A stretch of DNA of 64,000 bases. Source: Lepidodermella squamata. Taxonomy: Eukaryota > Animalia > Gastrotricha. Positions within the stretch are counted from its first letter, which is position 1, and each line of letters opens with the position of its first letter. This document shows positions 14,974 to 54,892 of this stretch, piece by piece. Made by a program: the position numbers and the translations under genes. The notes beneath the pieces are model-generated. The model was not told where the DNA came from, made no database searches, and saw only the letters and a program-made list of their open reading frames with translations. The stretch is taken from the NCBI GenBank assembly GCA_047495785.1, contig JBLDXI010000055.1, forward strand, positions 868,001 through 932,000. The letters are read 5' to 3'.

Positions 14974-15983
14974 ATGCCGGCAAACAAGAAACTGATAGCT
15001 GTTGTTGGCGCAAATGGTTCTCAGGGCGGAGGGTTGGCTAGGGCCATCTTGAAAGCGGGTGACAAGACAGATTTCGGCGTTCGAGCTATTGTCCGCGATC
15101 CAAACTCACATGGCGCTCAAGCCTTGAAATCCTGGGGTGCTGAGGTCGTTCAGGCCGATATCAACGACGAAGCTTCTATGGTGAAAGCCTTCCAGGGATG
15201 CTACGGCGCCTATTGTGTCACCTTTTTCTGGGAGAGGATGGACCCTGAGGAGGAGAAGCGCCAGGCGATGAACATGGCTAAAGCTGCTCAGTTAAGATAA
15301 ATCCTCGAGAGTTTATTCATTCATCTTTTTTTTACTTCAGAAAAGCTGGTTTGAAACATGTTGTTTGGTCAACGTTGGAAGATACCAGAAAGGTGATTCC
15401 ACTAGAAAGCCCCAGCATGCCAACTCTTATGGGCAAGTACAAGGTGCCTCATTTCGACGCCAAGGGCGAGGCAGATCACTACTTCATGGAGCTAGCTGTG
15501 CCAACAACCTTCATGGTCGCAACCTTCTTCTGGGACAACTTCATCGCATTCGGTATGGGGCCGAAGAAAATGCCTGATGGTACGATGGCCATCTCTCTAC
15601 CTCTCGGCAAAACGCATTTGCATGGAATTGCCGCTGAAGATATCGGAAAGTGCGCTCTTGGAATTTTCAATCGCCCTGATGAGTTTATAAATCGACGCGT
15701 GGGCGTTGCTGGTGAGTCGCTGACTGGCGAACAAATGGCGAAGAAAATGTCCCAAGTTCTTGGCAAGGAGATTCGCTACAACGAGCTTGGCTTTGATGAG
15801 TACCGAAAACTCAGCTTTCCTGGGTCTAAGGAGCTCGGCAACATGTTTCAGTACTACCACGACGCTGCTGCTGAGCTGGCTGCTATTCACAATGTCGAAC
15901 TGTCACGCGAGCTGAACCCTGAGCTGATGAATTTCGAACAGTGGCTCAAGAAAAACAAGGACCGCATTCCGATCGGTGAATGA
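14974..15983 (+). CDS. NmrA/HSCARG-like NAD(P)-binding protein, copy 1 (intron 15291-15340)
   Basis: VVGANGSQGG Rossmann motif, VVWSTLEDTR, VPHFDAKGEAD, EDIG, GNMFQY, LNP.L..FEQWL. Confidence 0.92.
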
Positions 15984-17117
15984 AAAAACCAATTGTCACC
16001 AAAATCACCAAGAACTGAATAACTTGAAGAGCAACTGTAAAGTTACGCCCCAATTTCATTTCCATGCTCAATGTTAAATCTTGATTACTTCATAAAATAA
16101 AGATACGAGTAAAGATTACAGTGAAATTTTAATTAAATTCGAGTTCGAAGTTGGATAAAGCTGAGATGGCACCATTTTTGGATAAAGTAGGATTTAAAAA
16201 TATTATTTGCGAAAATTTCCCTTTTTCAGTCTTCAACCTTTGTTACCTGAGAATTGTTGAACCTTTAGAAAATGCTGGAATGCTTCAAAAAATGATTAAT
16301 GAAAAGGGCTGAGCACATGCGCAATGAGAAAATTTTCCAAAATCTTGCTGTCACTCAATTTTGAAAAATTCTTCATGACAGAGAAAGCTCATGCAAAGGT
16401 CCGATGTGGGCTCTGTTTTTATCACTAATTTCGGCCGCTTCCTGGATCCGACCGCTGCGACCTAACTTCAGCCTCAGGCCGATATTTGGACACCAAGTGC
16501 TGTGTAGCGGTTTTTTGCGCGCAACTCAAGAAATTTGCATTGTGAAGCAAAGGTAAACAAAGGCGATTTCCAAGCTTGCCGGGACGAATTAAGGGTATCA
16601 AACTTAAGGTATTAGCGTAACTGGATGAGGTGGCCGAAATTAGGGCAACCGGTCCCTAATTCCGGCCAGGAGTCTAGGTGACTACAAAATTAGTTTTAAA
16701 TCGAGGTAAAATCATTCGGACTTGCGAAAACCGGCATTTGATAGTCCAAGGACTCTGTATTTGCCGAATATTTTCTAAAAATTATTCACCTGATTGGCAA
16801 AGTTGGAAAGACCCTAATAAGTGGCCAAACTTAGGGTGTGATGCTTTATAGACATGAAACATGAAATCACCGATTTACAGCTGCGTACAACCTATCTGCG
16901 TAAATCCAAACGAAGAAATGAACAATTTTTCAATTAAAATTTTTAAAATGAACAATCACGAATCACGGTGTTACGCTTTATAATTATTTGAAACCTGTCT
17001 CCTGTTGTCGCACCAGCTGTTGCGAGAGCTCGCGTGACCAATTTTCTCAACTCTTTTGGTCATTTTCTCAAATTTCACTCAAATTCAAAACAAAGTTGTT
17101 ACGCCTTTAGTTTAGCA

Positions 17118-20100
17118 ATGAAGTCGATAGTTCTCCTACTAACTTGTTTATTACTAGTTTTCACGCTCGATTTCGCCGATGGTATACGAGCATCTTCGCG
17201 CAATAATGCACGAAAAAAGCAGCAGATCAGCGAAGCTCTGAAGACTGAACTGCTAGCAGCAATTCAAAGCGACGAGACTTATTCAGTTGCTGACGTGCTG
17301 CAAAGATTTCCAAGTGGCCATTCAGTCAATTCGATAATAACTTACTCATTACGCCAGATTGACGCCAAGGAGCCGGCTGAGGAACCGGTTGACGAGCAGG
17401 AAATAGCCGACGAAGAGGTCGACACCTCGCCGACAGTCGCTGTTGATGTCACGCCGTTGTTTCTCGCCGCTCATTTTGACAAAGAAAATGTCGCTAAATA
17501 CCTGATTTCTCAGGGCGCTAATTTTACTGGTCGCTCGAATTTCTTCTTCGAACGCACTGCATTCCTTCAAGCCGCGGCTCGATCAAGCTTGAACACCTTC
17601 GATTTGTTCCTGAGGCAACAACGCCACTGGAAAGAAATCGTCACCGCTGTCAGTTTGGAGTTACGTGAGACCGTGTTTCATATCATAGCTGCCGATAAAT
17701 CAGAGGAAAACAGTCGCCAAATGTTGGAGAAATTGGAGGCGCTGTTCAAAAAGAAGAAGGCGAAATCTGTTATGGTGGAAATGTTGAATTCGCACGACAT
17801 CCACGGCCAAACGCCAATTCATCGAGCTGTAATCAATGGCAACGCGAACACAGCCCGTCTCCTTCTTATCATGGGTGCAGATTGCCATCGGTGGAACTTG
17901 GACAACGGCAGGTCAGCCCTGCATTTAGCAGCTTATCTCCGAAAGGTTGACGTTGTCAAGGTTTTGCTCGAGTCGAATCGTTGCGATCCTGAAACTCAAG
18001 ATTCTTGCGAGTTTTCTCTTGAAGATTACGCCGCCCGATCGCCATCCATCAGGCAGATCTTCGACAAATTCCAACCACAAAATCTTGAAATTCCGCTATC
18101 AAGCGAGAAGCTGAATATACCCTGCCTTGGCAAGCCGAAACAAGACGCTAATACTGGAGATGGCAAACGTATTCTCGCTGAAGTTGAAGCTTTGAAGCAG
18201 AAAAACAAAGAATCGGCAGCTGAAATACTCGAATTGAAGGCCGACTTGGAGAAGAAAAATCAGTTGACCTCGAAAATTTCCGATCTCGAAAAGACTGTTG
18301 CCGAGAAGACTGAGAAGATGGACGAGTTGAAAAACGAAACTGCTGAAAATCTCAGGCTGAAAAATGAAGAAATTACGGATTTGAAGCAAACTGTTGGCGC
18401 CAAGGTCGAAGAAATCAAAACGCGTGATGGGGAAATTTTGAGCTTGAAGTCGGCGGTCGAGAAGAAAGCCGAAGCTCTTCGAAGCCGAGAACAAGAAATC
18501 GCAGAGCTGAAGAAGAAGTGCAGCATTACAGATAATTCACAACGAATTTTGCCAACTACAACTACGCCAACAAACGAGCTTCCGAGTACAACTTCGGCCC
18601 ATTCAGAAGGTAAATTGATACAGATAATCAAAATTCCTCAACTTCAACTTTTACCAGAAACACCAGAGGCTCATACAACAGAGTCATCCTTGCCTCTTGA
18701 GGTCAAGACTACAACCGAAGAAGTGCCTGTTATTCCTTCGAGCACGTCTCCTTCGCCAACTTTGTCAATTACTGATCATGTTCCAGATGAGCAACTCCCT
18801 GAGTACACTTTTCAGCCAGATGTCGAGCAATTGCCGGGTTCGAATGGTGACGCTGATCCAGGCCATAGTTCGGCAAAGACTAGGCGTTCGGCCATTCTCA
18901 ATGGGCCAATCGAGTCTCTTGTCGTTATTGGATCTTCCGACGAGACATCCGCAGAGGAGAAGCCGCCGGTTGTATTTCAGCCACCACGAACAGCTCCGCA
19001 ATTCAAGCATACTACTTCCACAGTGGCACCACCGTCTGAGACGGAACCCTTTGTCGAGTATGCCCGAGTTGTTGTCGAAACCTACAACGAATCGTCACTT
19101 CCACTTGGCGCTGCGAAAGACGCCCATGACACGAAATTGGCGATATCAAGTAAAATAGACAGTGAAAATAATACTACGGAATGCATCGGCGGTATCGACA
19201 CGGCTACAGTCAAAGCGTTGAGGAATCAAGTTCATAATTTGTCGTTATTGCTGGATCGTGAGCGGCAGTTGTGGAAAAGCGATCGCGATTTCGTCGCAAT
19301 CACGACAAAGCGCCACACAAACGCGGCGCTGTTGATTGAAAAAGCGTTGAAATTCACCGGAATTATCGAGAGTATCCGGAAAGGCGCTGATGCTGGTGAC
19401 TCGGAAGACCTTTGGATTCGAAACCACCTCATTCGAGTCGATATTCACAATTTGGTGCAAATCCCTGTAAGCTTCTGAAAAGCCGTTGGAAATGTATAAT
19501 CTCGCCCTATTTTTGTTACCTAGAGACCGATCATGCCGGGCCAAAAGCATGCGCCCCCACCTTTGTCCAAGGTCGTGTTCACAATTTACGGCAATGGATT
19601 CACGGCGTCGGAAGCCTCTCGCTTATGTGGTCGTTTTGAAGGCGGTGTACTCGCTAATGTTCGCTCGAAATTCGAAGCAGACCTGCTCGAGCTTCCAAGT
19701 ATGAAAATTGTTAATTGAATTTTCAATTTTTTATTAATGATAATTTTTAGATGATGCACTTGATGACGGTCTCTGGGTTGGCCTGGTTCAAGGCCCGACA
19801 ATGGTGACCAACTCGACACTGACCAAATTCTGGTGGGCTGATGGATCGCCGCTATTCATCGCACCGGATGACATTTCAAATAGAAATTTCGCTGGACAGC
19901 TGGTGACATTTCATAATGAAGATCCAATGGTTGTTTTCGCCCGGTCTACAACCGAGCAGGACTCAAACGAACCTGGCTGTGGTAAACTGATCGGCATGAT
20001 CGAAGCGGTTTGAATTATTTTCTGAAATCCTATTGGTCAATTAATTGGTTTATTTCAGAAACTAGTTCCAGAGCAATGTGAGGCTCGATTAACGGCCGCG

Positions 20101-21011: not shown

Positions 21012-23417
21012 CTAGTGCATACTTGAGAAGGGACGTTGTGGTGTCACTGTTTGACGCGGAAAAGCTCTGTAAAGCATCAACGCCGGAGTCGAAGTGGCCA
21101 TAATAAGTAGGAAAGTGGCGACCGTTAACTGTTGCAAACTCGCTGAGCTGGACGACAACGCGACTACGGACAAAATAGCAGCAGCAACAAGAGTGAATTC
21201 GCTCGCTATAGCTAACCGGATTTGATTACTGTTCGCGAGAGTGACCTCAGCTGGTTCTTTCTTGTGCCTCAACCGATAAGCCATGAAAGCCGAGACGAAC
21301 AGCAACATCCCATGGCTAGCAAGAACTACGCCAAAGAACGTGTTGATCTTATCAGACCGGCAGTAAAATTCGAAAACATCGTTAAAAGTATCTCTAGGTT
21401 CGTCGTAATTCGACTCCTTTTCCACCTTAATTATCCAAACCTTGCTAGGCCCGTTCCAAAACAGGATGACCAGAGCGGTTACATTAAGGATTGAAAAGAT
21501 GAAAATAGCTGCAACAAAAAGCCATCGATTATGCTTGATATCCGAGCTGTTAAAGTGCCATTTCGATGATCGATTACTGCTGTGATGATGGTGTCGCGTC
21601 ATATTACCATCCTGATGAGCAGTTGAGGAAGCCATTAGAGCCGACGGCATCCTAGAAGAAGCACGACTGTAAGAATGCGTGGCTGATGAAGCGTGACGAG
21701 CGGCAACCCAGCTGAACAAAAGTCCGTGCAGCACAGTGAAGCCAAGTGTCGCGAAAATCATCCTCAGACTGCAGTACGTTGATCCTTCACCGTCTAATCC
21801 GGGGCTTTTCGCGAATAAAAAAGACGCGAAATTCAAGGTAAATGCAGCAACGATTAAAGGAATCGCATCGCCCTTGAAAATAAGTACAGATGTGAAGCTA
21901 CGAAATTTAGAGCGGAAAATAACTGCAGATAGCACAGCAGCTAGGATGGCACATGAGATAGTTGCCATTACAATGAATAAAATGAAAATATTTTGAGAAA
22001 TTCGCTTGATATTTTCCTTGTAAATAGCGCGGTCTCTAGGCGGCTTTCGATCAAGAGTGTGCCATTTGAAAGGATCGATTTGCGAATTTACAAAGGTGAA
22101 ATCACGCTTGGTTGAATCGTTATTATTCTGAAACAATATTTTAATGTTGAAAGCTTGGTTCAACGCGGCGGCTTGCGTTGAGACGTAGCAAGCATCATCT
22201 TCGATCTCGAGACGTGGGCTGTATTCAAATCTTCCCATTCTCAAGCCGACGAAGGGCGTCGTAGCTATCGTTTCATTCAGCACCTTCTGTATAGTTTTCC
22301 TATTACTCGCGAAATCTCTGAGAGACATATTGATCTTCACTAGCCTTTTCTCTAGCTCGTCAAGAACTAACAGGGGCTGTAAAACTCGATCGTGACATAG
22401 ATGGCGCTCGGGATAATCGTCCCGTTTGGTTCCGTTTACAAACTTCAGGAATAGCTCGTTGAATCCTTCAAGGTCGTAACCAAGCTGCGTTTTTCCAAAA
22501 TTTTCCATCGAGTAAACAACAGCCCCGACGTAGTAAATTGTTTTCATCAGCTCGTTAACCATTTTCTTGTTACATGGCGCAGAATCGCTGGCAGAAGCTA
22601 ATAAAGACGGATCGCGATTAGCTTGGTTGTACGGGGCGAGAAAGACAAATCGCTGCCCAACAACACCGCCTTTGTGACATAAGCAAAGGAAGTTTGTGAA
22701 GAACGGGAATTCGATGGCTTGAACGAAAATCACGCGGATTTGGCTGTTTTTCAGCATTCGAATAGAATTTTCGTCGACAAATGGCGTTGCCTCGAACCAG
22801 GCGACCTCAATATTTTCATCCAAAGCTGTCTGATAGAGATGAATAGCAACTGCGGTGTTGTATTCGTTTTCGGAATTTGCAATTATTCCAATTCTCTTCC
22901 ATAGGCCGATTCGTTTGATGAAAGCGATTACAGGATAGTTCGCAACTTCAGCCGAAGCTCGGCCTCGATAGACGCCCGGGTAGAGGCGCCTGTTATTTGT
23001 GAATCTCGGATTCAGGCAAGAAGTTGCGAGACTAATCAGGTCCAAGTGGTGAATAAAAGGTGCCACAGCTTTGCAACCTGGTGTAAAAGCTGGTCCGGTC
23101 ACAAGCGGGGATTCGTATACCGTGGTATCAGCAATCACCTGTGATGAAGTGTAGTTTCGGTCGAATTCTACCACTAGCTTGGCAGCGTAAATGCCATTGG
23201 CGCCCTCGTAATCGCTGTAAAGTGTCACGTGGTAATCGGGTAGAACGTCTGTTCGATTGTTGACAATTTCAACAACCATATCCTGGGCTGCATTGCAGCT
23301 GAATCCTGGGACTTGGTTTCTTAGGTTCAGCATCCTCAGCTGGTAGGGTTTTCTAGTTTGCCCCTGCTTGATTTGGAGAACCAGCATAATGGCTAGTATG
23401 AAAGTGTTGATATTCAT
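21012..23417 (-). CDS. Intact intronless class C GPCR-like receptor (Venus flytrap + 7TM, GABA-B-type architecture)
   Basis: Signal peptide, VNNRTDVLPDY, W+RIGII, IRVIFV, W..RKPPRD linker without a Cys-rich domain, seven TM segments with TM3/ECL2 cysteines. Confidence 0.85.
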   Translation of the reverse strand: MNINTFILAIMLVLQIKQGQTRKPYQLRMLNLRNQVPGFSCNAAQDMVVEIVNNRTDVLPDYHVTLYSDYEGANGIYAAKLVVEFDRNYTSSQVIADTTVYESPLVTGPAFTPGCKAVAPFIHHLDLISLATSCLNPRFTNNRRLYPGVYRGRASAEVANYPVIAFIKRIGLWKRIGIIANSENEYNTAVAIHLYQTALDENIEVAWFEATPFVDENSIRMLKNSQIRVIFVQAIEFPFFTNFLCLCHKGGVVGQRFVFLAPYNQANRDPSLLASASDSAPCNKKMVNELMKTIYYVGAVVYSMENFGKTQLGYDLEGFNELFLKFVNGTKRDDYPERHLCHDRVLQPLLVLDELEKRLVKINMSLRDFASNRKTIQKVLNETIATTPFVGLRMGRFEYSPRLEIEDDACYVSTQAAALNQAFNIKILFQNNNDSTKRDFTFVNSQIDPFKWHTLDRKPPRDRAIYKENIKRISQNIFILFIVMATISCAILAAVLSAVIFRSKFRSFTSVLIFKGDAIPLIVAAFTLNFASFLFAKSPGLDGEGSTYCSLRMIFATLGFTVLHGLLFSWVAARHASSATHSYSRASSRMPSALMASSTAHQDGNMTRHHHHSSNRSSKWHFNSSDIKHNRWLFVAAIFIFSILNVTALVILFWNGPSKVWIIKVEKESNYDEPRDTFNDVFEFYCRSDKINTFFGVVLASHGMLLFVSAFMAYRLRHKKEPAEVTLANSNQIRLAIASEFTLVAAAILSVVALSSSSASLQQLTVATFLLIMATSTPALMLYRAFPRQTVTPQRPFSSMH

Positions 23418-23713
23418 AGCTGTGATTATGATTTTAGGAAAAATTCTAAATGCAGTTTGCAAATATTGCTTTTACTGCCTAAAATAAAGCCAACGCCAAC
23501 TTGTTCCGATGAGGGGTATTTTCCATCTCTCTCAAGGATCAGGTTACCAAAATAATGTAAAATGGAAAATAGATGCGTGTCGGCGGACAATGCATCCATA
23601 GCACGTTAATATCCTACTCATTTTAATATTCGAGCCAAATAATATTTAGCTTGAAATTTTAGGTTGAAAAGACAAAATAAGCGGCTAAAGTCAATTTATT
23701 CAGTTAATAGTTC

Positions 23714-24460
23714 TCAACAGAGGCTCCAGCCATCATGGCCTCGAACAAAAAATGGCTGGATGAATCCCTGGTTCTCAGTAGGATAAAATAGGCAACCTTC
23801 AAACTTCATAATCTTTTCCTCGTCGCTTACAATCAGAACTCGGGATCGAAAGTTCATAAAATCGTCTCGCATGATTTTCAACACGCTATAGGCCAATTTC
23901 CGCAGACAGCGCGGTAACGGTTGGGTTCTAGCCATAGCCGCAAGTTCATCAGCCAGTTCCAATTCGAGTTCCACGGGAGAGAAGTGCTCAGTGATGTCGT
24001 CGAAATTATGCAGCTCTGGTAGCCATTTTTCTTGAAATTTTGCAATATCTGCCAGCATTTCAGCATTCAGATTACTGCTCCGGTAACTTTACTTTTCCAT
24101 CAATCACAGCACAAGCAAAATCGGCATCAAGCCTTAATTTCCGAGTGGTTAGAGCATAGGTCTTTTCGATGAAAAAAATTGAAGAAAAAGCTGGGTGAAC
24201 TACGTGTTTGTATATCGGAAATAGACAGGGACACTTATCGAAATCTAACTCGAGCTCTTTCGACAGCGGACAGCGGGTGACATTGGCGACATCCTGTTGC
24301 GAAGACAATCACGTCAACTTTTGCCGTAGTCCCACCTACGAAAAAGGCCGTTTCGCCAGCAGCTTTCACGAGATTAGGCCGAAGTTTGACAGGGCACTTG
24401 TCGTTTTCCAAAATCCAGAAAGGCTTGCAACGATGCCATGATAAATACACCTCAGGGCAT
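23714..24460 (-). pseudogene. Truncated, frameshifted duplicate of the 3' half of the FMO at 25178-26512
   Basis: Three ORF fragments in different frames (YLSWHRCKPFW, FPIYKHVVHPAF, MLADIAKF) nearly identical to the neighbour; the 5' half is absent. Confidence 0.85.
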
Positions 24461-24563
24461 ATCTTTTATTAGTCTCATTAGTCTGAGTATTCTGACCTGG
24501 ACGCACTGTATAGGAGGGAAAAGACGCGCGCATCTCGATTGGCACGTTGTACATTTTCAAAAT

Positions 24564-24900: not shown

Positions 24901-25177
24901 CAATTCCCTAGCAAATCTCTGAATGTTTTAGTAGTAATATTGTTTTGCATCGACTGAAAAAATGGTCAACGCCAACTTGTTCCAATTAGGGTTATTTTTC
25001 ATCTCTATCTCAAAGATCAGATTACTAAACTGTCAAATCGAAAATTGACTCTTGCCGGCGGAACGGAATACTCGCATTCGAGGTATGATAATGCTACTAT
25101 TCATATTCATACTATTCAAGTCGAGTCAAATAGGTTGAAAAAACAAAACAAGCGGCTATATTCAATTTATTCAATTT

Positions 25178-26512
25178 TTAGTTCTCTACCGGAACAAACG
25201 GACAACCGTCGCATTTCATCAGCTTTTCCTCGTCATGTTCAATTTGAACGTAGGATTGAAAGTTCATAAAATCGTCACGCATGATTTTCAACAGGCCATA
25301 CACCAATTTCCGCATACAACGCGGTAGAGGCTGGGTTTTTGTCATAGCTGCAAGTTCGTCAGCCAGTTCCAATTCAAGCTCCACAATAGGGAAATACTTC
25401 GTTACGTCAACTTCAGCAACTTTCGGCAGCTCTGGTAACCATTTTTCGTGAAACCTAGCAATATCTGCCAGCATTTCGGATTGATTCGGTAACTTGATAG
25501 ACCCGTCAATCACATCGCAAGCAAAATCGGCATCAAGCCTCAGTTTACGAGTTGTAAATGCAAAGGCTTTTCCAATGAAGAATATCGAAGTAAAAGCTGG
25601 ATGAACAACGTGTTTGTAAATCGGAAAGAGACATGGGCATTTATCGAAATCCAACTCGAGCTCTTTCGACAGCGGATGACACTGTCGATACCCTGTTGCG
25701 AAGACAATTGCGTCAACATTTGCCGTAGTCCCATCTACAAAGAACGCCGTTTCGCCAACAGCCTTGACAAGGTTCGGCCGAAGTTTAACAGGGCATTTGT
25801 CGTTTTCCGAAATCCAGAATGGCTTGCAACGATGCCAGGATAAATACACCTCAGGGCAGAGCTTTGCCAAATTTGAAGTTATATCCATAGCACCAAATGA
25901 GGTGCCAACAATTAGCACCCTCTTGCCTGAGAGTGAAGCCGGCTCGTGAAGTTCTTGAAAATGTGAAATCGATCCAGAAAATCGCTTTATGTCAAATTCG
26001 GGTGGTATGAAAGGCTTGCGATGCTGCCCACAGCAGAAGAAAACGTAGTTGAATGGCTCGGCCTGAACCTCACCGGTCGCAAGATTTTTGAACTCAACCA
26101 TCGGCGTTTCATGGTCAGCTGGGTTTCGATAAACGTTCTTCACCAGGGTGGAGAACCGGATATATTGCAAGAGATTGAATTTCAGCGCGAATTCTTGCAG
26201 ATATCGAAGATGTTCATAATGCATAAGGAATGTTCTGTTGGTAATGTGTTCGGGCATTGGAAAGTCCGGATGTATCTCCATATTAAATCGATAGGTATTT
26301 GCCTGCAAGCCATGGTACATGCTGCTTTTGATCGGAAAGCCTTCGCTCGATGTGTCTGGCTTTTCGACGCTCGGTATCCATTCGCCGCCAGCCTGATCAG
26401 AACCTTCGAAACAAACAACTTCAAGGTCAGGAAAGATCGGGAGAAGCCGCTTTTGAATAGTGTACAAGGCGACCAAACCGGCAGGTCCAGCTCCAATCAC
26501 AGCTATTCTCAT
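25178..26512 (-). CDS. Class B flavin-containing monooxygenase (FMO-like), intronless
   Basis: GAGPAG FAD motif, GGEW, SSMY.GL..N, FSGSISH (FMO motif), second Rossmann region LIVGTSFGA, FATGY, PIYKHVVHP. Confidence 0.9.
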   Translation of the reverse strand: MRIAVIGAGPAGLVALYTIQKRLLPIFPDLEVVCFEGSDQAGGEWIPSVEKPDTSSEGFPIKSSMYHGLQANTYRFNMEIHPDFPMPEHITNRTFLMHYEHLRYLQEFALKFNLLQYIRFSTLVKNVYRNPADHETPMVEFKNLATGEVQAEPFNYVFFCCGQHRKPFIPPEFDIKRFSGSISHFQELHEPASLSGKRVLIVGTSFGAMDITSNLAKLCPEVYLSWHRCKPFWISENDKCPVKLRPNLVKAVGETAFFVDGTTANVDAIVFATGYRQCHPLSKELELDFDKCPCLFPIYKHVVHPAFTSIFFIGKAFAFTTRKLRLDADFACDVIDGSIKLPNQSEMLADIARFHEKWLPELPKVAEVDVTKYFPIVELELELADELAAMTKTQPLPRCMRKLVYGLLKIMRDDFMNFQSYVQIEHDEEKLMKCDGCPFVPVEN

Positions 26513-28237: not shown

Positions 28238-29321
28238 TTATTCAAGATTTTTTAGCGGAATTTTATGACCATTTTCAGCTAGCCATTCGTCGAAATTAGC
28301 TGGTTTGAAGTTCAACCTGGCCTGCAAATCATCAACACTTCGAGCGGCCATGTATTTGCCGTGAAAATCGTGGCAAAATTGAAACATGTTTCCAAGGAAT
28401 TGGAACATGTTGATCAAGTCTTCGGAGCCACTGGCGGCGCCGTAATTCCGATATTCGTCCCATGAAACGGCTTTGTAGACAATTTTCTGTTGCAGTGCTT
28501 CCGACATTTTCTCTGCCATCTCTTCTCCAGTTAGATGGCCGCCAGCCACTCCAATGCGTTTTCCCTTGGTTTCAGTAGGGTGCTTAAAAATTGAAAGAGC
28601 AACTTTCCCGATATCTTCAGCAGCGACTCCAGACATAGGCCGATCGCCGAGAGGAAGACTCAGGCACAGCCTGCCATCAGGTTCTCTTTTCGGGCCAAAT
28701 CCGAAGTTGATGAAGTTTTCCCAATAAAACGAAGGTAGCAGATAAGTTGCTGGTAGGTCGGCAAACAGAGCATCAGCTTCACCCTTAGCATCAAATTGGG
28801 GAACATTGAACCGTTCCTGTAAAATTGGCATTCGTTCCCCAATTGTTATGAATTGCCGGGTATCTTCAGATGTCGACCAGATGACGTGCTTCAAATCTGA
28901 TTTCCTAAAAAAAAAGGAATTAGGATTCGAGTCGGTTTTATAACCTGGAGATACTTTGCAGCATTAGCCAGATTCCTAGCTTGTTGGAGCTCTTTTTGCC
29001 CATTCCAATGGTTCCAGAAAAACGTGACAAAATAAGCCCCATAAGCGCCTTGCAGAGCTTTAGCTACTGATTGCTCATCGTCGATGTCAGCCTGTACAAC
29101 TTCAGCTCCTAATTCTTCGAGAATTTTACTCTGTCCAAAGGTGAACAAATGTGAGACCGATTTAGCGGAAAATTATATGGTAAAACCTTGGCAGAGTTGA
29201 TATCCCGGGTGATGGCGCGGGCTCTGAATTCTCCGGAGATATCATTGAGGATTTCCCGTACAAGGCCGCCTCCTTGGGCACCCGTGGCGCCGAAAACAGC
29301 TATTATCTTTTTATCATGCAT
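28238..29321 (-). CDS. NmrA/HSCARG-like protein, copy 2 (introns 29131-29186, 28905-28954)
   Basis: VFGATGAQGG, HVIWSTSEDTR, VPQFDAKGEAD; splicing joins three ORF-track fragments. Confidence 0.9.
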
Positions 29322-32497: not shown

Positions 32498-33552
32498 TTA
32501 GGCTACTGGAATTTTATCTTTGTTAGTAGCCAGCCACTTATCAAAATTACTCGGTTCGAACTTCAAGTCGTTGCGCAAAGTGTCAAGGCTGCGAGCGGCG
32601 ATGAATTGATCGGCACAATCGTGGTAGAACTGAAACATGTTGGCAGCGTCATCAACGCCTGGAAAACCGAAACCGCGATAGGCTTCCCACGAGACCTCGT
32701 TGTAGTGGATTTCATTGCCAAGAGCCTTGGACAGTTTCTCAGCGAGCTGAGCACCTGTCAAATTCTCGCCAGTAACTCCGATCCGCCTGCCAATGGTTTC
32801 GGGGTGCTTGAAAATGGCGTAAGCAGCGTTGCCGATGTCTTCAACAGCTACTCCAGACAGTGGCCGCTTTCCAAGAGGCATAGTAATGTACAACTTGCCA
32901 TCAGGGCCTTTCTTCGGGCCAGTGCCAGTCGCGGCGTTGGTGAAGTTATCCCAATAGAAAGCCGTCAACAGGTAGGTGGTCGGGAGGTCGGCGAAATACT
33001 TATCAGCCTCGCCTTTGCCATCGAAATGGGGAACGTTGTACTTTCCGTGCAGGGTTGGCATTGTGGTGCCTAGAGGTACGAGCTTGCGGGTATCCTCCAG
33101 AGTTGACCAGATGACGTGCTTCACACCGGCTTGTCTAATGATGATTAATGATTTAGAAGGATGTTGTTGATAATTAAGCGACTCACTTGGCAGCACTAGC
33201 CAGAGTTTTAGCCTGCTCCATCTCCTTCTCTGGGCTGAAATGTTCCCAGAAGAAGGTGACGAAAAAGGCGCCGTAGGCTCCCTGCAAGGCTTTGACAACA
33301 GACTCCTCATCATTAATATCAGCCTGGACGACCTCGGCGCCGGAACTCTTCAGAGCTTTACTCTGAAATGGAAATGCATGAGAAATAGTTTGAAGGAAAC
33401 AAGGCCAAAATTCGAACCTTTTCCGAGTTGACGTCGCGAGTGATAGCACGGGCAGCGAATTGGCCAGAGGCGTCGTTGAGAATGGCTCGAACTAGAGCGC
33501 CTCCTTGAGCTCCGGTAGCTCCGACTACAGCGATGATTTTCTTAGCTGACAT
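32498..33552 (-). CDS. NmrA/HSCARG-like protein, copy 3 (introns 33363-33417, 33135-33186)
   Basis: VVGATGAQGG, WSTLEDTR, VPHFDGKGEAD, GFPGVDDAANMF. Confidence 0.92.
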
Positions 33553-35416: not shown

Positions 35417-36475
35417 TCAAGCGTCGAGTGGAATTTTGTCCTTGTTCTTAGCCAGCCACTTGTCGAAATTGTTCGGTTCAAACTTCAAGTCTTTGCGCAG
35501 AGTGTCAATGTTACGAGCAGCGATGAACTGATCGGCACAGTCATGGTAGAACTGGAACATGTTGCCCAAGTCGTCAGCACCGGGAAAACCGAACTTACGA
35601 TAGGCATCCCATGAGACCTCGTTGTAGTGGATTTCTTTGCCAAGAGCCTTCGACAGTTTCTCAGCCAGCTGGGCGCCCGTCAAATGCTCGCCGGCAACTC
35701 CGATCCGCCTGCCGATGGTTTCGGGGTGTTTGAAAATGGCGAAAGCAGCGTTGCCGATGTCTTCAACAGCGACCCCAGACATTGGCCGCTTGCCAAGAGG
35801 CAGAGTAACGTACAACTTGCCATCAGGGCCTTTCTTCGGGCCGAGGCCAAGGCCGATGAAGTTATCCCAATAGAAAGTGGTCAAGAGGTAGGTGGTGGGA
35901 AGGGCGGCGAAATATTGATCAGCCTCGCCTTTCCCATCGAAATGGGGAACGTTGTACTTTCCGTGCAGGGTTGGCATTGTGGTGCCCAGAGGCACGAACT
36001 TGCGGGTATCCTCCAGAGTTGACCAGATCACGTGCTTGATGCCGGCTTTTCTAATGAAAATATTGTTATAAAAAGACGATTGATAATTAAGCAAACGGCA
36101 ACTCACTTGGCAGCGCTAGCCAGGGTTTTAGCTTGCTCGATCTCCTTCTCCGCGCTGAAATGGTCCCAGAAAAAGGTGACAAAATAGGCGCCGTAGGCTC
36201 CTTGCAAGGCTTTGACGAGAGATTCCTCATTGTTGATGTCAGCCTGGACGACCTCGGCGCCAGAGCTCTTCAAAGCTTTGCTCTATAATAGGAATAGATG
36301 TTAAGTAGCTTCAAGACAATTTTCAGGTTAAAACTATTACCTTGTCAGAGTTGATGTCGCGAGTGATAGCACGAGCAGCGAATTGACCAGAGGCGTCGTT
36401 GAGAATGGCTCGAACTAGAGCGCCACCTTGAGCTCCGGTAGCTCCGACTACAGCGATGATTTTCTTAGCAGACAT
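35417..36475 (-). CDS. NmrA/HSCARG-like protein, copy 4; recent tandem duplicate of copy 3 (introns 36283-36340, 36051-36106)
   Basis: Near-identical exons to copy 3; flanking noncoding DNA is also alignable. Confidence 0.92.
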
Positions 36476-38100: not shown

Positions 38101-39205
38101 ATGCCTCAAGCTGATTACCCACATCAAAAGGTGATTGCTGTCATTGGCGCTACTGGTTTGCAAGGCGGTGGCTTGGTTCGAGCCATCTCGCAAGAACGCG
38201 ATCGAAGCCCAAATGCCTGTGAATTTTCTGTTCGGGCAATCGCACGCCACACGTTGTCAGAGAAGGCTTATCACCTGAAAAACTGCGCTATCGAAGTTCG
38301 CGAGGCTGATTTGAACGATGAATCATCACTGATCAAAGCCATCGAAGGCTGTTATGGCATGTTCTGCGTATCTATTTCCTCGATGAACCCGGAAAACGAA
38401 CACTTTCAAGCTCGCAACATGGCTTTTGCAGCTAGGTAATTTTGGCTTGATATAGCGCTAATGATGGCAGCAAATTATTTTGAAACAGGGATGCAAAAAT
38501 CCAACATGTAATATGGTCAACTTTGGAAAACACGAAAGACCATTTGGCCGGTGTACAGATGCCGACTTTGCAAGGCAGTTACAAAGTACCTCATTTTGAA
38601 GCCAAAGCCGAGAGTGATCGTTATTTTGCCGAAGCTAACGTACCAACGACGTACCTTATCACGTCATTCTATTGGGACAATTTTCTTTTGAATGAAATGT
38701 TGCGACCTCGAAAGTCACGCGTTTTCTTCGGCCACGATGAAAAGTGGGAAATTGCAATGCCTATGGGCGATAAAAAGCTGGCTGGGATCGCTTCTGAAGA
38801 TATTGGTAAATTCTAAATTCAGCATTTCCGTTATTTGAATCTTGACTATTTTTTCAAGGAAAATGTGCTTTCGGAATTTTTAAACGCCGCGATGAAATGG
38901 CCAATCAACGAGTTGGGATAATGAGCGAAGCGTTGACTGGCCACGAAATAGCCGCTACTATGACTAAGGTATTCGGGAAGCAAGTCAGCTACAACAGTTC
39001 GATGGACTTCGATCAGTATCGATCGCAAATGCACCCGGGTATTGCCGAGTTGGGCAACATGTTTCAGTATTTTCACAACTGCGAAGAAGAGGCGATTAGC
39101 CATCGAAGTTCGGACGCTGCTCGTACGCTCAACCCTGAACTGTTGACTTTTGAACAGTGGCTCGAGAAAAATAAGGACTCTTTCAAATCGACTTTTGCAG
39201 CTTGA
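38101..39205 (+). CDS. NmrA/HSCARG-like protein, copy 5 (introns 38436-38488, 38806-38858)
   Basis: VIGATGLQGG, WSTLENTK, VPHFEAKAESD, LGNMFQYF. Confidence 0.9.
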
Positions 39206-43123: not shown

Positions 43124-45916
43124 GGCTATACATTCGCGAATTTTGACCAAGCTTTGAAAGATTTTACGGCGAATAGAACGGATATTTCATTCGATTACCC
43201 GTCAAGATACGCCTGTCATGATGTTATTATGCACTCAATATTGACACTAAATGAATCTGATGCGATTTTGAAGCAGCAACATCAACTATCTCTAAAGGAC
43301 TGAATATCGAATCGGGATATAGTCTTCAAGGTTGTCAAAAATGCTGCAGCAAAGGTTAAATTCGTCGGCGCGAGGGTAGGGCCTATGGCCTGGGACGAAA
43401 ACGGCGAACTGAATGAGGACATGTTCGTGCGACAAGTCGTCGGAAGAAAAGTTCGATCGGTCGCAAAACTGGAATACAATGAAAATAACGGCAGTATGCA
43501 AGGTGTCTACAGCTACAAATTGATCGAACCACCAGTTTTTGCGACTCATTTCGGGGGATCTCCTAAAGACTTATCGGCGATCGAAAATAGGATCGCGCAA
43601 TGTGGCGAAATTCTGATAGCTTCAAGCTTCATCGTAGCTGCCTTAATTTCAATTTCACAACTCTGCATTTTCTCAAAGTCTCTCATGAATGGCTCTAAAG
43701 TTGAGGGGTACCAGCTTTTTTATGGGGTTAAGGCTAAAACTGGCATTTTGTTATCACTTATCATCTCCAATGTTTCCGCTGTTCTCATTTTAGTTGGGGT
43801 TGACTACTTTCCTTGGCTAGAATGCCAACTAAGACCTTTATTTGTCGCCTTTGGCCCAAGTTACATACACAGCTTTCTTATTAGTCACCTCGTGGCCTTT
43901 GCAAAATGTATGACATTCAGACTAAGACGACGTAGGAGAAGGGCGAGATCATGGGGTGTTATCCCTAAATCTCTGAAAATGGACATCGAAATAACATCCA
44001 ACCCTCGACAAACCGCTAGACAAATAATTGCTGTTTTCGCCTTAATTTTTCTGCCTTGCATGCTTGGTTTGATTGTGTGGATATCAGGAGATAGTCTGCA
44101 GTTACAGCTGTCTATATCCGAGACCGCGTTTGACGACGAAGAGGACACCTATTTCACAGTCACGTCGCCCGAATGTGGTTCAACTGATGGGCAATTCTGG
44201 ACTGCAGCTATTTCAGGGTACCATGCGTTTTTACTGGTCCTGGCGAATGGATTATCACTAGAGTTGCGCCGGAAAACATTTCCGAGAGTGGTCGAGTTCA
44301 GTGTCCGCTTGGTTCGCCTCGCTTCGTTAAACGCCCTGGGTAACGTGGTGGCGTTGGTTTTGATCATCGCTGTCTTATCGACCTCGACGATGCATTGCAT
44401 TCGACCGGCCATATTTTGCTTCGGCTTGCTCACTTACTCGCTAATTACCGGTATTATTTTGTTGTTTCCTCACCCAGTGAGCAAAAAGAGACAAAGCCGC
44501 AAGGTGTCGGATCCATTTCCTCTTAATAATTGAGGCTTTTAATAATTTTTCAATAAAATTGTCTTGGTTCAATGCATAATTAACGGAAAATCTTGCTGCA
44601 AATGTACAGTAGCCTGAACAAATCGAGAACAACTTTATTATCCGACATGTCTGTTCTATCCGGCTAATTTGAGTTGTTTTGTTCAACAACTCAAAATGCG
44701 TGGCTTATGACAACAAATATTGCCTTACGAAAAGCCGAAATCTGCTAATCAGACCGCCTGATAGACTTTCGATATACGTGTCAGCAGTTCAACCTAATTT
44801 ACGCCATGAATTCGCGAAAACGAGTAAAACTGTCCGATCGAACTTCAATCACAACAGACGTCGAAAAACGCCTGACGATCGGAAAACTATTGGATGAAAT
44901 TAGACCTTGGTTGGATGAAAAATGTCGGACCCGAAAAATACCAGAATAATGGGTATTATTTGGAAAAATACTTGATCTTTGAAAATCTAAACACCAATTC
45001 GATGAAATAATAATTAACTCCCCCTTCTCCCTAACCTATACTGCGGGGCATTTGGCTCAGAAAGCCGTGCCGATCGGGCCATTAAAGTAGCCCCCTACAG
45101 CGTCACCTGTGACGGAAGATCACAGACGGACCGTGGCCAGGTGGGACCTGCTTAAACCACCCTCCGTCAGATTGAACCTAAACTATCCCGTGTTCCCTAA
45201 GAAGTTTCCCATATAGGCTACTAGGATTTCGTTAGAAATCCCAGTTACACCCGACCCGTCTTGAAATTGCGTCGCAATTTCCCATGAAACTTTCGTTTCG
45301 GCCAGTCTTTTAAATAAAGAAAGAAATGTAAAATGTTCAGAGGATTTACGTACATTTTAATGAATCTATATATCATTATAACTGAGTATGGCTCAATTTC
45401 GGGCTCTCATTTGCTTGTGTAAATTTTGCTTCATGCGACCATCGGAGGCTCCATGGAGAGATTCCACGCAAAAAATCATCAAGCTGTGACCAGAAATAAA
45501 TAGGTTGTTGAAAAAATGCTACCTTTAACCCCTACTTTTTGTCAGCCTTAGCCATCTCGAAACCTGGAAACGTGTAACTACAGGCTTGAGGTCGTGGGGC
45601 CGGATCATTAGCTGTTTTGTTATAACATCAGGTTAAACATTAAATTCACATTAGCGCCAATTTTTACATGGTTGTATGATACCGGGCTGCTATTATCCCA
45701 CAGGCTCGTGGCGCTCGTGCCGTCTAATCTTCCCTGTTGCGAACAGGCCGGCCGCGCCATATAGCAGGCAGGCATGTGACAAAAACAGCTTACATTACAT
45801 GCTGCTGGCTCTCCACTTCCTACGCTCTTTAACAGCTCAAGTGATGAACGCGATGATGACAAATACAAAGCTGGGATTCCTTCACCCCACGAGCAGTTGT
45901 ATAGCTCGATAGAAAA

Positions 45917-50208: not shown

Positions 50209-51211
50209 ATGCCTGCTGACAAGAAGACCATCGCTGTTATTGGCGGCACTGGCCACCAAGGCATCGGCCTCATCCGCGCCATCATGACCGAGGCTGACAA
50301 GGGCGAGTTCGCCGTCCGCGCCATCACCAAGGACGTCACCTCGCAAACCGCGCAGTGGCTGAAGAAGAACGGCGTCGAAGTTCGCGATGTCGATGTTGTC
50401 GACGAAGACAAACTGGCCGAAGCTATCAAGGGATGCTATGGCCTGTACGCTGTTACCTTCTACTGGCACACCATGAACCCCGAAGAAGAGCTGCGCCAAG
50501 CTCGTAGCATGGCGAATGCCGCCAAGTAAAAACTCCAGCTTAAAATATTTAACCCTGATTTTTTCGTAATACAGGAAAGCCGGTGTCAAGCATGTCATCT
50601 GGTCAACCCTTGAGGACACTCGGGAAGCTCTGAAAGACACTGACGTCCCGACGCTGTTCGAAAAGTTCAAGGTGCCGCCATTCGATGCCAAGGCTGAGGC
50701 TGATCGCTTCTTCTCGGAAAGCGGCGTCCCAACCACGTACTTCATCACGCCGTTCTACTGGGAGAACTTCATCGATATGGGCATGGAGCCGAAGAAGTCG
50801 TCGGATGGCAACTTCGAAATCGCCGTTCCGATGGGCAACAAGCGAATTGGCGGCATGGCGGCCGAGGACGTTGGCCGATGCGCCCTGACCATTTTCAAGA
50901 ACCCAAGCGAGTACGCCAACAAGCGAGTCGGAGTTATGAGCGAGGCGTTGACTGTCAACGAAATCGCTGAGAAGATGTCGCGCGTTCTTAGCAAAACAAT
51001 CCGCTATCGCGATATCAGCGTCGATGACTACCGCAAGACCAGCATTCCTGGTGTTAAGGAGCTCGCCAACATGTTCGTCTACTACAACAAGTGTGAGGAC
51101 ACTGTTTTGAAGATTCGCTGCCCGGACACTGCCCGCAAGCTGTGCCCGAACGTCATGAACTTTGATGCCTGGCTCAACAAGTACAAGGACCTCATCCCGA
51201 TTCGCGCCTGA
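50209..51211 (+). CDS. NmrA/HSCARG-like protein, copy 6 (intron 50526-50574)
   Basis: VIGGTGHQGIG, WSTLEDTR, VPPFDAKAEAD; strongly C/G-ending codons. Confidence 0.92.
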
Positions 51212-52622: not shown

Positions 52623-53621
52623 ATGCCTCAAGAAAAGAAAATTATTGCAGTTGTTGGTGCAAATGGTAAACAAGGCGGTGGTTTGATTCGAGCTATTCTG
52701 AACGAAGGCGAGTCAAGTGAGTTCAAGGTACGCGCTCTGGTGCGAAACGTCAATTCAGAGCATGCTCGATTTTTGAAACACCAACCCAATGTCGAGGTCT
52801 GCGCCACGAATATTACCAATGAAGAGTCTGTCCGTCATGCGGTCAAGGGCGCTTATGGCCTGTATGCTGTTTCATTCTACTACGACCACCTGAACCCGGA
52901 GGAGGAGATCAATGAAGCGAAAAACATGGCTGCAGCTGCCAAGTAATACCCAACCTTAACGATAGAATATTTTTAAATTTTATTCAGAGCCGCGGGCGTG
53001 CAACACGTGATCTGGTCGACCTTTGAAGACAGCCGCAAACTCTTTGAAAATCCCGATGAAATTGAAACCATGAAAGAGCGATTCAAGGTACCGATGTGCG
53101 ATGCGAAAGCTGAAGGTGATCAGTTCTTCGACCCATCAATTACAACGTATCTGCTGCCATCATTCTACTGGGAGAATTTCATCGACAGCGGCTATCAGCC
53201 TCGCAAAACATCACCCGGTCACTGGTCACTGTGGATGCCACTCGGCGAGAAAAAGTTGCCTGGAATTGCGGCTGAAGATATCGGAAAATGCGCGTTGGCT
53301 ATTTTCAAAAATCGAGGCGATTACATTGGAAAACGGGTTGGAATAATGAGCGAGGCTTTGAGTGGTAACGAAATGGCGCTACAAATCGGTAAAGCTATCG
53401 GTCGCGAGGTTGACTACAAGCCATTTTCACTGGACGAATATCGCAAGTCTGGCTTCGCTATCCCGCCCGAGCTCGTCAATTTATTTGCTTTTTACGAAAA
53501 ATGTGAGGCGAAATTGTTGGCAAATCGTAACGTAGACGAGACACGCCGCCTCGTCCCAGATTTGCTGAGCTTTTCATCGTGGCTGGCTAAATATGGCAAA
53601 TTCATGCCTGTTGCTGTTTGA
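52623..53621 (+). CDS. NmrA/HSCARG-like protein, copy 7 (intron 52943-52987)
   Basis: VVGANGKQGG, WSTFEDSR, VPMCDAKAEGD, AAEDIGKCA. Confidence 0.92.
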
Positions 53622-53859
53622 CGATTGCGCAATAAACGCTGCTGTGTGCGCGCACTGACTCTTCTAGAAACTTCTATTAATAGAACATTCCAGATGCGCG
53701 CGTGTAAACACATTATGCAATGTACTTACGCTACACTATAAATACCCCGCTTGGCTCGCATTCAATTTTAATAATAATCACGCTTTGTTTTGCTTTTGTC
53801 ACTAATAGATACTTTCGAAATTTCAATTCTCCTGCTTTATTGTTGCTGACTACTAAATC

Positions 53860-54892
53860 ATGCGATTTCAAATCTCACGTGAAAATTCTGAAAATGAGCC
53901 GAAAATTATCGCTATTGTTGGCGCGACTAGCCGACAAGGCGGCGCCCTCGCCCGGGCGATTCTGCGCGATGGCGAATTCAGAGTGCGAGCCATTGTTCGA
54001 ACTCCATCGTCTCCGAGCGCCCAGCAATTGAAGAAAATGGGCGCTGAGTTATTCGTTGCCGATACGAACGACGGCAAGCATCTCACCGAGGCATTTACGG
54101 GTTGCTTTGGCTTGTTTGGCATGACCTTTTACTGCAATAATCTCAATCCAAATGAAGAGCTACGGCAGGGGCGCAATATGGCTAACGCAGCAAGGTGAGT
54201 TTTTGAGAAAATTATTTATTTCTAAATTGTTCATTCATCAATAATACAGATCAGCTGGCGTGAAACACGTGATTTGGTCGACTATGGAAGATACTCGAGA
54301 ATTTCTGCCAACCGCCCGCTTGCCTACCCTGGATAGCAAGTACAAAGTGCCGCAATTCGACGCGAAAGGCTCAATGGACTACTATTTCTCCGAGCTCGAA
54401 ATTCCGACAACTTTCCTGAAATCCTCGTTCCTCTACGACAATTTTCTCGCGACTCCTTTCGCCCCGAAATTCGGCCCTGAAGGCTATTCGGCGCTGCGGC
54501 TGCCGATCAAGGCAAACAAACGAATCGCTTGCATTTCAGTCGAAGACATCGGCAAATGCGCTCTAGGAATATTCAAGCGTTCCGACGAGTACATCAACAA
54601 AAGCGTTGGCATTGTCGGCGATGTGTTGACGCCGGAGGAAATCGCCGCGAAAATGTCGACGGCTCTTGATCAAGACATCCGATTCGAAGAAGTCCCATTT
54701 GAAGACTACCGGCAGTTGCGGGTTAAAGGCGCTAAACCAATTGCTAACATGTTTCGATTTTTCAGCGACTGCGAAACCGAACTGCTGGCAGTTCGGAGCC
54801 GGGATGAATCACGGAAATTGAACCCGGAACTGCGGTCATTCGATTGCTGGCTCGAAGAACACAAGGACGAAAGTTCGACATTTTCGGCATGA
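53860..54892 (+). CDS. NmrA/HSCARG-like protein, copy 8 (intron 54195-54249)
   Basis: IVGATSRQGG, WSTMEDTR, VPQFDAKG, ANMFRFF; start codon uncertain. Confidence 0.88.

What the first reader, a model, noticed from the sequence alone, without database searches (positions are those of the whole stretch)
14974..54892. NmrA array looks bacterial-type: candidate horizontal acquisition followed by eight-fold expansion
Seen: all copies carry an insert WSTLEDTR..(P)L...MPTL.GKYKVPHFDAKGEAD and the tail FFWDNFI.FGMGPKK.PDG...I.LP.G. From my recollection of the family, vertebrate NMRAL1 has a shorter YSGLENIK..T.G...AAHFDGK segment, while the longer signature is typical of a bacterial NmrA/HSCARG subgroup. 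Spliceosomal introns and animal-type neighbours argue against contamination. Horizontal transfer is an inference.
Basis: partly seen in the sequence, partly recalled or inferred. Interest (0 to 1): 0.8.

Follow-up and report, generated by a model that had tools for sequence, protein, structure and literature searches.

The report
Bacterial-like NmrA genes expanded in animal
Eight intact, intron-bearing NAD(P)H-binding NmrA/HSCARG genes in this animal window belong to a family of at least 40 copies whose closest relatives are soil-bacterial proteins, so an old bacterial gene transfer followed by duplication is likely, but the tree tests do not prove it.

Summary
The window has eight intact NmrA (PF05368) genes with GT-AG introns of about 50 nt, set among eukaryotic neighbours.

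The genome has at least 40 such loci on about 10 contigs.

- **For a bacterial origin:** three searches of 5.8 billion proteins listed only bacterial or metagenomic proteins, at 49-63% identity. The human NMRAL1 match is far weaker (101 against 307 bits). The ML tree puts the family in a shallow bacterial radiation that spans many phyla.
- **For one ancestral gene:** all copies checked, and an environmental relative, share one phase-2 intron. A single-clade tree is not rejected (AU p 0.43).
- **Against a firm verdict:** a tree joining the family to eukaryotic NMRAL1-like proteins is not rejected either (AU p 0.19). Likelihood mapping is star-like (35/33/32%). The genome has no separate NMRAL1 gene.
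- **The "insert" is not a bacterial marker.** Diatom-type eukaryotic homologues have it too. Human NMRAL1 simply has a 10-residue deletion there.

Verdict: an old single bacterial transfer followed by expansion, about 0.7. A slowly evolving vertical gene is about 0.2.

NmrA-like genes are already listed among sponge transfer candidates. This scan also reported the same reading for the neighbouring array on other DNA of this genome.

The parts
14974..15983 (+). NmrA copy 1. Exon 1 is 14974-15290, a phase-2 GT-AG intron is 15291-15340 (50 nt), and exon 2 is 15341-15983.
   Evidence: Sequence read. Pfam NmrA hits: 9.5e-23 for exon 1 and 4.3e-23 for exon 2. Best bacterial hit is 61% identical.
28238..29321 (-). 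NmrA copy 2. It has three exons: an extra intron near bacterial residue 45, plus the shared phase-2 intron.
   Evidence: tblastn pieces, junctions, Pfam.
32498..33552 (-). NmrA copy 3, with three exons. It is a recent tandem partner of copy 4 (87% amino-acid identity, dN/dS 0.18, dS 0.40).
35417..36475 (-). NmrA copy 4, with three exons. It is the most bacteria-like copy (64% identity to P0163).
38101..39205 (+). NmrA copy 5. It has the shared intron plus a private phase-1 intron inside DIG|KC (about 38811-38857). The frame stays intact once these are spliced out.
50209..51211 (+). NmrA copy 6, with two exons. Its closest paralogue lies outside the window at C55:950 kb (79% identity, dN/dS 0.10).
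52623..53621 (+). NmrA copy 7, with two exons. The shared intron is a multiple of 3 nt long and holds two TAA stops. This is the most divergent copy (36-47% identity to the others).
53860..54892 (+). NmrA copy 8, with two exons. Its glycine motif reads GATSRQG, so the second glycine is replaced by serine.
25178..26512 (-). FMO-like gene (444 aa, single exon) interleaved with the NmrA copies. Further copies lie at 29493-30811 (-) and 55426-56748 (+). These are context only and are not shown to be functionally linked.
   Evidence: Pfam PF00743 hits of 8.7e-44, 1.4e-36 and 6.4e-37.

Best explanation
These are real animal genes for NAD(P)(H)-binding atypical short-chain dehydrogenase-fold proteins of the NmrA/HSCARG family.

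The most likely history has four steps:
1. A single bacterial gene, of the widespread soil and freshwater type of about 316 residues, entered an ancestor of this animal lineage.
2. It gained a phase-2 spliceosomal intron after the codon following the conserved A-A.
3. It then duplicated repeatedly, by tandem and block duplication and by dispersal, to at least 40 copies.
4. This began before the lineage split from at least one other species known only from environmental sequence.

The copies are kept under purifying selection.

By homology (inferred, not shown), the proteins bind NADPH through the N-terminal GxxGxxG Rossmann motif and a conserved arginine. They would act either as redox (NADPH/NADP+) sensors like human HSCARG, or as reductases of small electrophiles such as quinones. 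Paralogues probably differ in partner or substrate, because the residue four before the invariant lysine varies.
For: **Closest relatives are bacterial**
- Copy 1 exon 2 finds proteins of 57-63% identity (E 2.6e-86, 307 bits).
- A profile of 31 own copies finds the same kind of proteins.
- So does the most derived subfamily, at 49-55% identity.
- All named hits are bacterial. None comes from EukProt or from an annotated animal.
- At least 582 bacterial species genomes from more than 10 phyla carry homologues of 56-62% identity.
- Human NMRAL1 scores only 101 bits.

**Similarity pattern and tree**
- Each copy is as close or closer to bacteria than to its deep paralogues.
- In the careful ML tree the clade holding all window copies has support 97/90. 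Its stem is about 0.1 substitutions per site and it joins the bacterial polytomy.
- Orthologues in the related species are 0.56-0.66 apart.

**Single origin**
- The same phase-2 intron is found in all 8 window copies, in C34-type and C48-type copies, and in the environmental relative L032.
- A tree with all own copies as one clade is not rejected (AU p 0.43).

**Age and integration**
- L032 is syntenic with the genome.
- P0349 is 61% identical to its orthologue.
- dS is saturated for all pairs except c3/c4, and dN/dS is 0.10-0.18.
- The genes are integrated: they have introns, eukaryotic neighbours and lie on a 2.08-Mb contig.
- An independent DNA data set covers the gene across its intron.
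Against: - **Tree tests.** Topology tests do not exclude vertical descent. Forcing the family together with the eukaryotic NMRAL1-like proteins costs 16 lnL units but gives AU p 0.19. Likelihood mapping of 4000 quartets gives 35.4/32.6/32.1% for the three groupings.
- **Possible bias in similarity.** The bacterial group has very short branches. High identity to it could partly reflect its closeness to the family's ancestral sequence.
- **No separate NMRAL1.** The genome has no other NMRAL1-type gene. That is what vertical descent would predict. Under transfer it requires an extra loss.
- **Limited eukaryote sampling.** The only metazoan NMRAL1 I could compare was the human one.
- **No RNA evidence** was obtained for the window copies.
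- **No specific donor** can be named.
Confidence: 0.7

Rival explanations
1. Vertical descent. The family is this lineage's own NMRAL1/HSCARG gene, inherited from early eukaryotes. It stayed close to the slowly evolving ancestral, bacteria-like sequence and expanded, while vertebrate NMRAL1 diverged and lost 10 residues.
For: - The genome has no other NMRAL1-type locus.
- The AU test does not reject a tree joining own copies and eukaryotic NMRAL1-like proteins (p 0.19).
- Quartet mapping is star-like.
- The long segment also occurs in eukaryotic homologues.
- A eukaryotic NMRAL1-like representative is up to 48% identical to copy 4.
Against: - No annotated animal or EukProt protein appears among the best 120 hits of three searches, while hundreds of bacteria do.
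- The stem of the clade is about 0.1 substitutions per site, against 0.3-0.8 within the clade and 0.56-0.66 between orthologues of two related species. Vertical descent would therefore need more than a billion years of near-stasis followed by sharp acceleration.
- The constrained tree is 16 lnL units worse.
Confidence: 0.22
2. Several independent transfers from bacteria gave rise to the different subfamilies (C55-type, C34-type and others).
For: - The two main own clades are not joined in the ML trees.
- Each copy is about as close to bacteria as to deep paralogues.
Against: - All subfamilies checked share the same phase-2 intron at the same codon. Bacterial genes cannot bring this with them.
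- Monophyly of all own copies is not rejected (AU p 0.43, 5 lnL units).
Confidence: 0.05
3. Contamination or misassembly: the genes are bacterial DNA in the assembly.
For: The only support is the high similarity to bacterial proteins.
Against: - The genes have GT-AG (and one GC-AG) introns.
- They have eukaryotic neighbours on both sides.
- They lie on a 2.08-Mb contig.
- More than 40 diverged copies sit on many contigs.
- A separate DNA run covers copy 1, intron included.
Confidence: 0.01

Closest known systems
Bacterial 'NmrA/HSCARG family protein' of about 316 aa (uncharacterised; JGI labels it YbjT/DUF2867 family). Found in Acidobacteriota, Bacteroidota, Nitrospirota, Gemmatimonadota and other phyla.
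   Same: Same length and colinear over the whole protein. Identity is 47-64% in the exon-2 region, with the same GxxGxxG start and the same WSTLEDTR...KVPHFDAKGE segment.
   Different: The animal genes carry spliceosomal introns, have eukaryotic neighbours and exist in more than 40 diverged copies. The bacterial genes are single, intronless and have no conserved neighbourhood. No member of this bacterial group has a tested function that I know of.
Human NMRAL1/HSCARG (PDB 2wm3, 2exx, 3dxf), an NADPH sensor.
   Same: Same family and fold class, alignable end to end, with the NADPH-binding glycine motif and arginine conserved.
   Different: It scores only about 101 bits against copy 1 exon 2, compared with 307 bits for bacteria. 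The human protein lacks 10 residues of the WSTLEDTR...HFD segment and 5 residues near the C-terminus. It is single-copy in humans.
NmrA-like genes listed among candidate prokaryote-derived genes of the sponge Amphimedon queenslandica (Conaco et al. 2016, PMC4784904).
   Same: Same Pfam family proposed as a bacterial acquisition in an animal. That paper names NmrA-like among the commonest Pfam domains of its transfer set; it describes tandem clusters and introns for other genes in the set, the metallopeptidases, not for the NmrA-like genes.
   Different: I could not compare the sequences. No sponge protein appeared among the best hits of any search here, so this may be a separate event. The paper gives no NmrA tree or copy count.
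Enzymatic NmrA-like proteins with solved structures: KstA11-type 'monooxygenase' (5f5n) and CtdP (7uf8).
   Same: Same fold and family. 5f5n scores 90.7 bits against copy 1 exon 2.
   Different: They are distant relatives that act in bacterial or fungal natural-product pathways. No such pathway context is seen here.

Membership tests
NmrA/HSCARG family (Pfam PF05368, atypical SDR) | Match to the family profile above the curated cut-off | tested here: met
   All ten pieces tested score 27.4-83.8 bits against a cut-off of 27. A genome-wide search with the profile finds 88 exon-level matches.
NmrA/HSCARG family (Pfam PF05368, atypical SDR) | N-terminal GxxGxxG dinucleotide-binding motif, plus the arginine that binds the 2'-phosphate of NADP(H) (role known from HSCARG structures; my own knowledge) | tested here: met
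   GA(N/T)GxQG is present in 7 of 8 copies; copy 8 has GATSRQG. The (T/V)R(D/N) arginine is present in 7 of 8 copies; copy 6 has lysine (translations). Actual binding was not tested.
NmrA/HSCARG family (Pfam PF05368, atypical SDR) | Classical SDR catalytic YxxxK replaced (HxxxK in HSCARG) | tested here: inconclusive
   The lysine is invariant in 31 own copies (K38). The residue four before it is H in c1, c3, c4 and c5, Q in c2 and c8, P in c6 and M in c7. What this means for catalysis is unknown.
Metazoan NMRAL1 orthologue | Closest relatives are animal NMRAL1 proteins | tested here: not met
   The best 120 hits of three searches are bacterial or metagenomic. Human NMRAL1 is more distant than all 150 listed cluster representatives for copy 7.
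Metazoan NMRAL1 orthologue | The 10-residue deletion seen in human NMRAL1 between SxLE and HFD | tested here: not met
   All own copies have the long form. Whether non-vertebrate animal NMRAL1 proteins share the deletion could not be checked.
Metazoan NMRAL1 orthologue | Groups with eukaryotic NMRAL1-like proteins in a tree | tested here: inconclusive
   They are not grouped in the ML trees. However, the grouping is not rejected (AU p 0.19) and quartets are star-like.
Horizontally acquired bacterial gene in an animal | Physically integrated in the host genome (introns, host neighbours, long contig) | tested here: met
Horizontally acquired bacterial gene in an animal | Far stronger similarity to bacteria than to other animals (alien-index type criterion) | tested here: met
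   E 2.6e-86 (307 bits) for bacteria against 8e-28 (101 bits) for human. No named animal protein is in any top list. Caveat: the best non-human animal hit is unknown.
Horizontally acquired bacterial gene in an animal | Nested within a bacterial clade with statistical support | tested here: inconclusive
   The clade of own copies plus the bacterial group has SH-aLRT 86 and a stem of 0.047. AU and likelihood mapping are not decisive.
Horizontally acquired bacterial gene in an animal | Patchy distribution: absent from other animals and close unicellular relatives | tested here: inconclusive
   Only three environmental sequences join the clade: P0349, P0350 and P0354. Clustering at 50% identity could hide animal members inside clusters represented by bacterial proteins.

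The most novel reading that the evidence does not exclude
A single bacterial NADPH-binding gene was taken up by an animal lineage and amplified to more than 40 maintained copies. Many sit in arrays interleaved with FMO-like, Xi-class GST and carbonyl-reductase genes. On this reading the foreign gene became the core of a lineage-specific, diversified redox or xenobiotic defence system and replaced the animal's own NMRAL1.
Probability: 0.15. Interest if true: 0.6.

Novelty: new member of a known kind. Interest (0 to 1): 0.38.

Why it matters
If the transfer is real, this would be one of the larger expansions of a bacterial-derived gene in an animal: more than 40 copies, old, and under purifying selection. 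It would also be a case where the foreign gene may have replaced the native NMRAL1.

It also gives a caution for the scan. For this family, best-hit or alien-index evidence looks overwhelming, yet tree-based tests stay undecided, because the bacterial group sits close to the centre of a star-like family tree.

The biology itself is not surprising. Transfer-derived redox genes in small invertebrates are well documented, and NmrA-like genes are already listed among transfer candidates for a sponge.

Tried and rejected
- **Split NmrA ORFs in the hit list.** I suspected P0038 and P0100 were eukaryotic exon-2 ORFs. L001 turned out to be a bacterial contig with a one-base frameshift and a Shine-Dalgarno site. 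L002 is bacterial and cut off by the contig end.
- **RNA evidence.** The one read-laying run gave only DNA-like contigs over copy 1, with the intron retained, and no splice joint. Expression of the window copies therefore remains untested.
- **Diagnostic columns.** Only 5 columns separate the bacterial consensus from the eukaryotic one. That is too few to polarise.
- **Bacterial gene neighbourhoods.** I looked at them for a functional hint. Nothing is conserved: neighbours are SpoIIE, APH, an RNA methyltransferase and redoxin.
- **NCBIfam.** No specific family matched.
- **ESM Atlas feature search.** It listed NmrA clusters from both domains with equal scores, which is uninformative for origin.
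- **Organism identity.** The nematode SL1 and a rotifer spliced-leader sequence recalled from memory both gave no match. The eukaryotic SSU rRNA search failed. The organism stays unidentified; other scan notes guess a rotifer-like animal (unchecked).
- **Literature.** The only NmrA-as-transfer listing found for animals is the Amphimedon paper.
- **Joined protein models.** All searches and trees use the exon-2 region (about 206 columns), which limits tree power.
- **Protein complex job.** None was sent, because no binding claim is made.
Full report
**What is there**

The ORF list, Pfam scan and a tblastn with a full-length bacterial homologue show eight NmrA/HSCARG-family genes in the window. 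Their coordinates are under 'parts'.

- **Introns.** All eight are intact. Copy 1 was read base by base: exon 1 is 14974-15290, a 50-nt GTTAAG...TTCAG intron follows, and exon 2 is 15341-15983. The intron interrupts a codon after its second base. The same phase-2 intron, right after the conserved A-A, is present in all eight copies. Copies 2-4 have a second intron near residue 45, and copy 5 has a private one inside DIG|KC.
- **Neighbours.** They are eukaryotic: an ankyrin-repeat protein, two ANF_receptor genes, a PAN-domain mucin and three FMO-like genes.
- **Not contamination.** The contig is 2.08 Mb long. Contigs of an independent DNA run cover copy 1 across its intron at about 97% identity.

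**Scale**

- The window is C55:868001-932000 of a 121-Mb assembly. A six-frame search of that assembly with copy 1 exon 2 gives 50 matches, equal to at least 40 loci. About 19 lie on C55 between 850 and 987 kb, about 13 on C34, and others on C4, C13, C28, C48, C10, C15, C23 and C54.
- Window copies are 36-87% identical to each other. Only c3/c4 is a young pair (dS 0.40); the other pairs are saturated at synonymous sites. dN/dS is 0.10-0.18.
- In the trees the window copies interleave with those of the array 30-55 kb further on: c6 pairs with L005, c4 with L006 and c8 with L004. The history is therefore old subfamilies plus block duplication, not one local eight-fold burst.

**Closest relatives**

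I ran three word-indexed searches of 5.8 billion proteins: copy 1 exon 2, a profile of 31 own copies and the most derived C34-type copy.

- Each listed 120 best hits at 49-63% identity. Every named hit is bacterial: Terriglobales, Chitinophagaceae, Niastella, Hymenobacter, Nitrospira-like, Gemmatimonadota, Eremiobacterota, Terrimicrobiaceae and others.
- No hit comes from EukProt or from an annotated animal.
- At least 582 bacterial species genomes from more than ten phyla hold homologues of 56-62% identity.
- Human NMRAL1 scores 101 bits (E 8e-28) against copy 1 exon 2, compared with 307 bits for the best bacterial protein.
- Each own copy is as close or closer to bacteria than to its deep paralogues. 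For example, c1 is 60.8% identical to bacteria and 60.1% to its best paralogue.

**Relatives of the animal family**

An exhaustive search of 1.84 billion cluster representatives with copy 7 found 901 proteins at E of 0.001 or better. In the tree, three of them fall inside the clade of the window copies.

- **P0349 and P0350.** They sit on 1-kb JGI contigs without the intron. P0350's contig ends in a 3' UTR with AATAAA, so it is probably mRNA.
- **P0354.** It sits on an 8.5-kb ENA metagenome scaffold (L032) next to PfkB and 7tm_1 genes. Its ORF reads through an in-frame intron at exactly the shared position and phase.
- **Synteny.** L032's downstream gene matches the gene beside own copy L011 at 71% nucleotide identity. 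P0349 is 61% identical to its orthologue L003.
- **Conclusion.** The subfamilies, and therefore the origin of the family, predate the split from at least one fairly distant related species.

**One origin or several**

The phase-2 intron is also present in C34-type copies (as a GC-AG intron) and in C48-type copies. A tree with all own and environmental copies held as one clade is only 5 lnL units worse (AU p 0.43). I take this as one ancestral gene.

**Bacterial transfer or vertical descent**

*The trees.* The careful ML tree has 86 rows and 208 columns and uses LG+C20+F+G4.
- The clade holding all window copies has support 97/90, and the C34-type clade has 100/100.
- Both attach to an unresolved polytomy of the bacterial group of about 316-residue proteins.
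- The eukaryotic NMRAL1-like representatives stand apart. P0449 scores 186 bits to human NMRAL1. The P0430 cluster holds a Chaetoceros protein.

*Why this is weak.* The backbone is short. The stem uniting the own copies and the bacterial group is 0.047 with SH-aLRT 86.
- Forcing own copies together with the eukaryotic NMRAL1-like proteins costs 16 lnL units but is not rejected (AU p 0.19).
- Likelihood mapping of 4000 quartets drawn from own, bacterial 316-residue, eukaryotic and other bacterial groups gives 35.4/32.6/32.1%.
- Topology therefore does not decide the question.
- The genome has no other NMRAL1-type locus. That fits vertical descent as well as it fits replacement.

*What still favours transfer.*
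- Many bacteria carry close homologues, while no comparable protein appears in any annotated eukaryote.
- The stem of the own clade is about 0.1 substitutions per site. Within the clade the distances are 0.3-0.8, and orthologues of two related species are 0.56-0.66 apart. Vertical descent would need very long stasis followed by acceleration.
- I put transfer at about 0.7 and vertical descent at about 0.2.

The long WSTLEDTR...MPTL.GKYKVPHFDAKGE segment is real. Human NMRAL1 does lack 10 residues of it, and 5 more near the C-terminus. But the long form also occurs in the eukaryotic NMRAL1-like representatives, including the diatom cluster. Only a few representatives, such as P0466, share a human-like deletion. 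P0466 lies on a compact eukaryotic contig. So the long form is ancestral for the family and does not mark a bacterial origin. The second motif (FFWDNFI...GPKK.PDG) is family-wide.

**Likely function (inferred)**

- The glycine motif and the arginine that binds the NADP(H) phosphate are kept in 7 of 8 copies.
- The lysine of the HxxxK motif is invariant in 31 copies, while the H position varies.
- I expect NADP(H)-binding proteins that act either as redox sensors like HSCARG or as small-molecule reductases, and I expect the paralogues to have diverged in function.
- GC3 of the copies (0.45-0.75) is somewhat above that of neighbouring genes (0.45-0.52). I cannot say whether this reflects expression bias or residual donor composition.

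**Prior knowledge**

- Conaco et al. 2016 (PMC4784904) name NmrA-like among the commonest domains in the prokaryote-derived gene set of the sponge Amphimedon.
- This scan already reported the same reading for the neighbouring eight-copy array (s1-430943) and for NmrA genes paired with pseudokinase genes (s1-374001). My analysis agrees on the bacterial similarity. It adds the genome-wide count, the shared intron, the environmental orthologues, and the negative result of the topology tests.

**Limits**

Trees rest on the exon-2 region only.
- The organism is unidentified.

Noticed in passing
window 23714-26512, 29493-30811, 55426-56748: Three intact FMO-like genes (PF00743) are interleaved with the NmrA copies. 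A fourth copy at about 23714-24450 is spread over several frames and looks degraded.
   Followed up: partly
window 26785-27387 and 27656-28201: Two adjacent ORFs (200 and 181 aa) have no Pfam match and share a ...GGFILFER.LN... C-terminal motif. They may be a lineage-specific orphan family. L032's unannotated neighbour gene also has several copies on C55 (863.6, 988.1, 990.7, 993.9 and 996.0 kb); I did not compare it with the two window ORFs.
   Followed up: partly
window 16364-16954: This intergenic stretch has very high contig depth in run X1 (up to about 4900, against about 100 elsewhere) and many rearranged joints. It is probably a high-copy repeat or mobile element.
   Followed up: no
window 21012-23462 (-), 40580-41581 and 43385-44533 (+): These look like class-C-like receptor genes. 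One 816-aa ORF combines an ANF_receptor domain with a hydrophobic C-terminal half. A second ANF_receptor ORF is followed 1.8 kb later by a multi-pass membrane ORF and may be one split gene.
   Followed up: partly
L116 (G000:C34:403400-405000): The shared intron of this C34-type NmrA copy uses a GC-AG donor (AG|GCAAGT) and is about 320 nt long, much longer than the roughly 50-nt introns in the window. C34-type copies also have an extra intron after residue 16, inside the glycine motif.
   Followed up: partly
window 14000-19900 against run X1: The only DNA run that holds this stretch differs by about 3% throughout, in both genes and spacers. It comes from another strain, haplotype or sister species, not from the assembled individual.
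   Followed up: no
P0357 cluster: A bacterial-type homologue with a long N-terminal extension (416 aa) clusters with a Euglena mutabilis transcript from EukProt. At least one other eukaryote may therefore carry the bacterial-type gene, or that transcriptome is contaminated.
   Followed up: no
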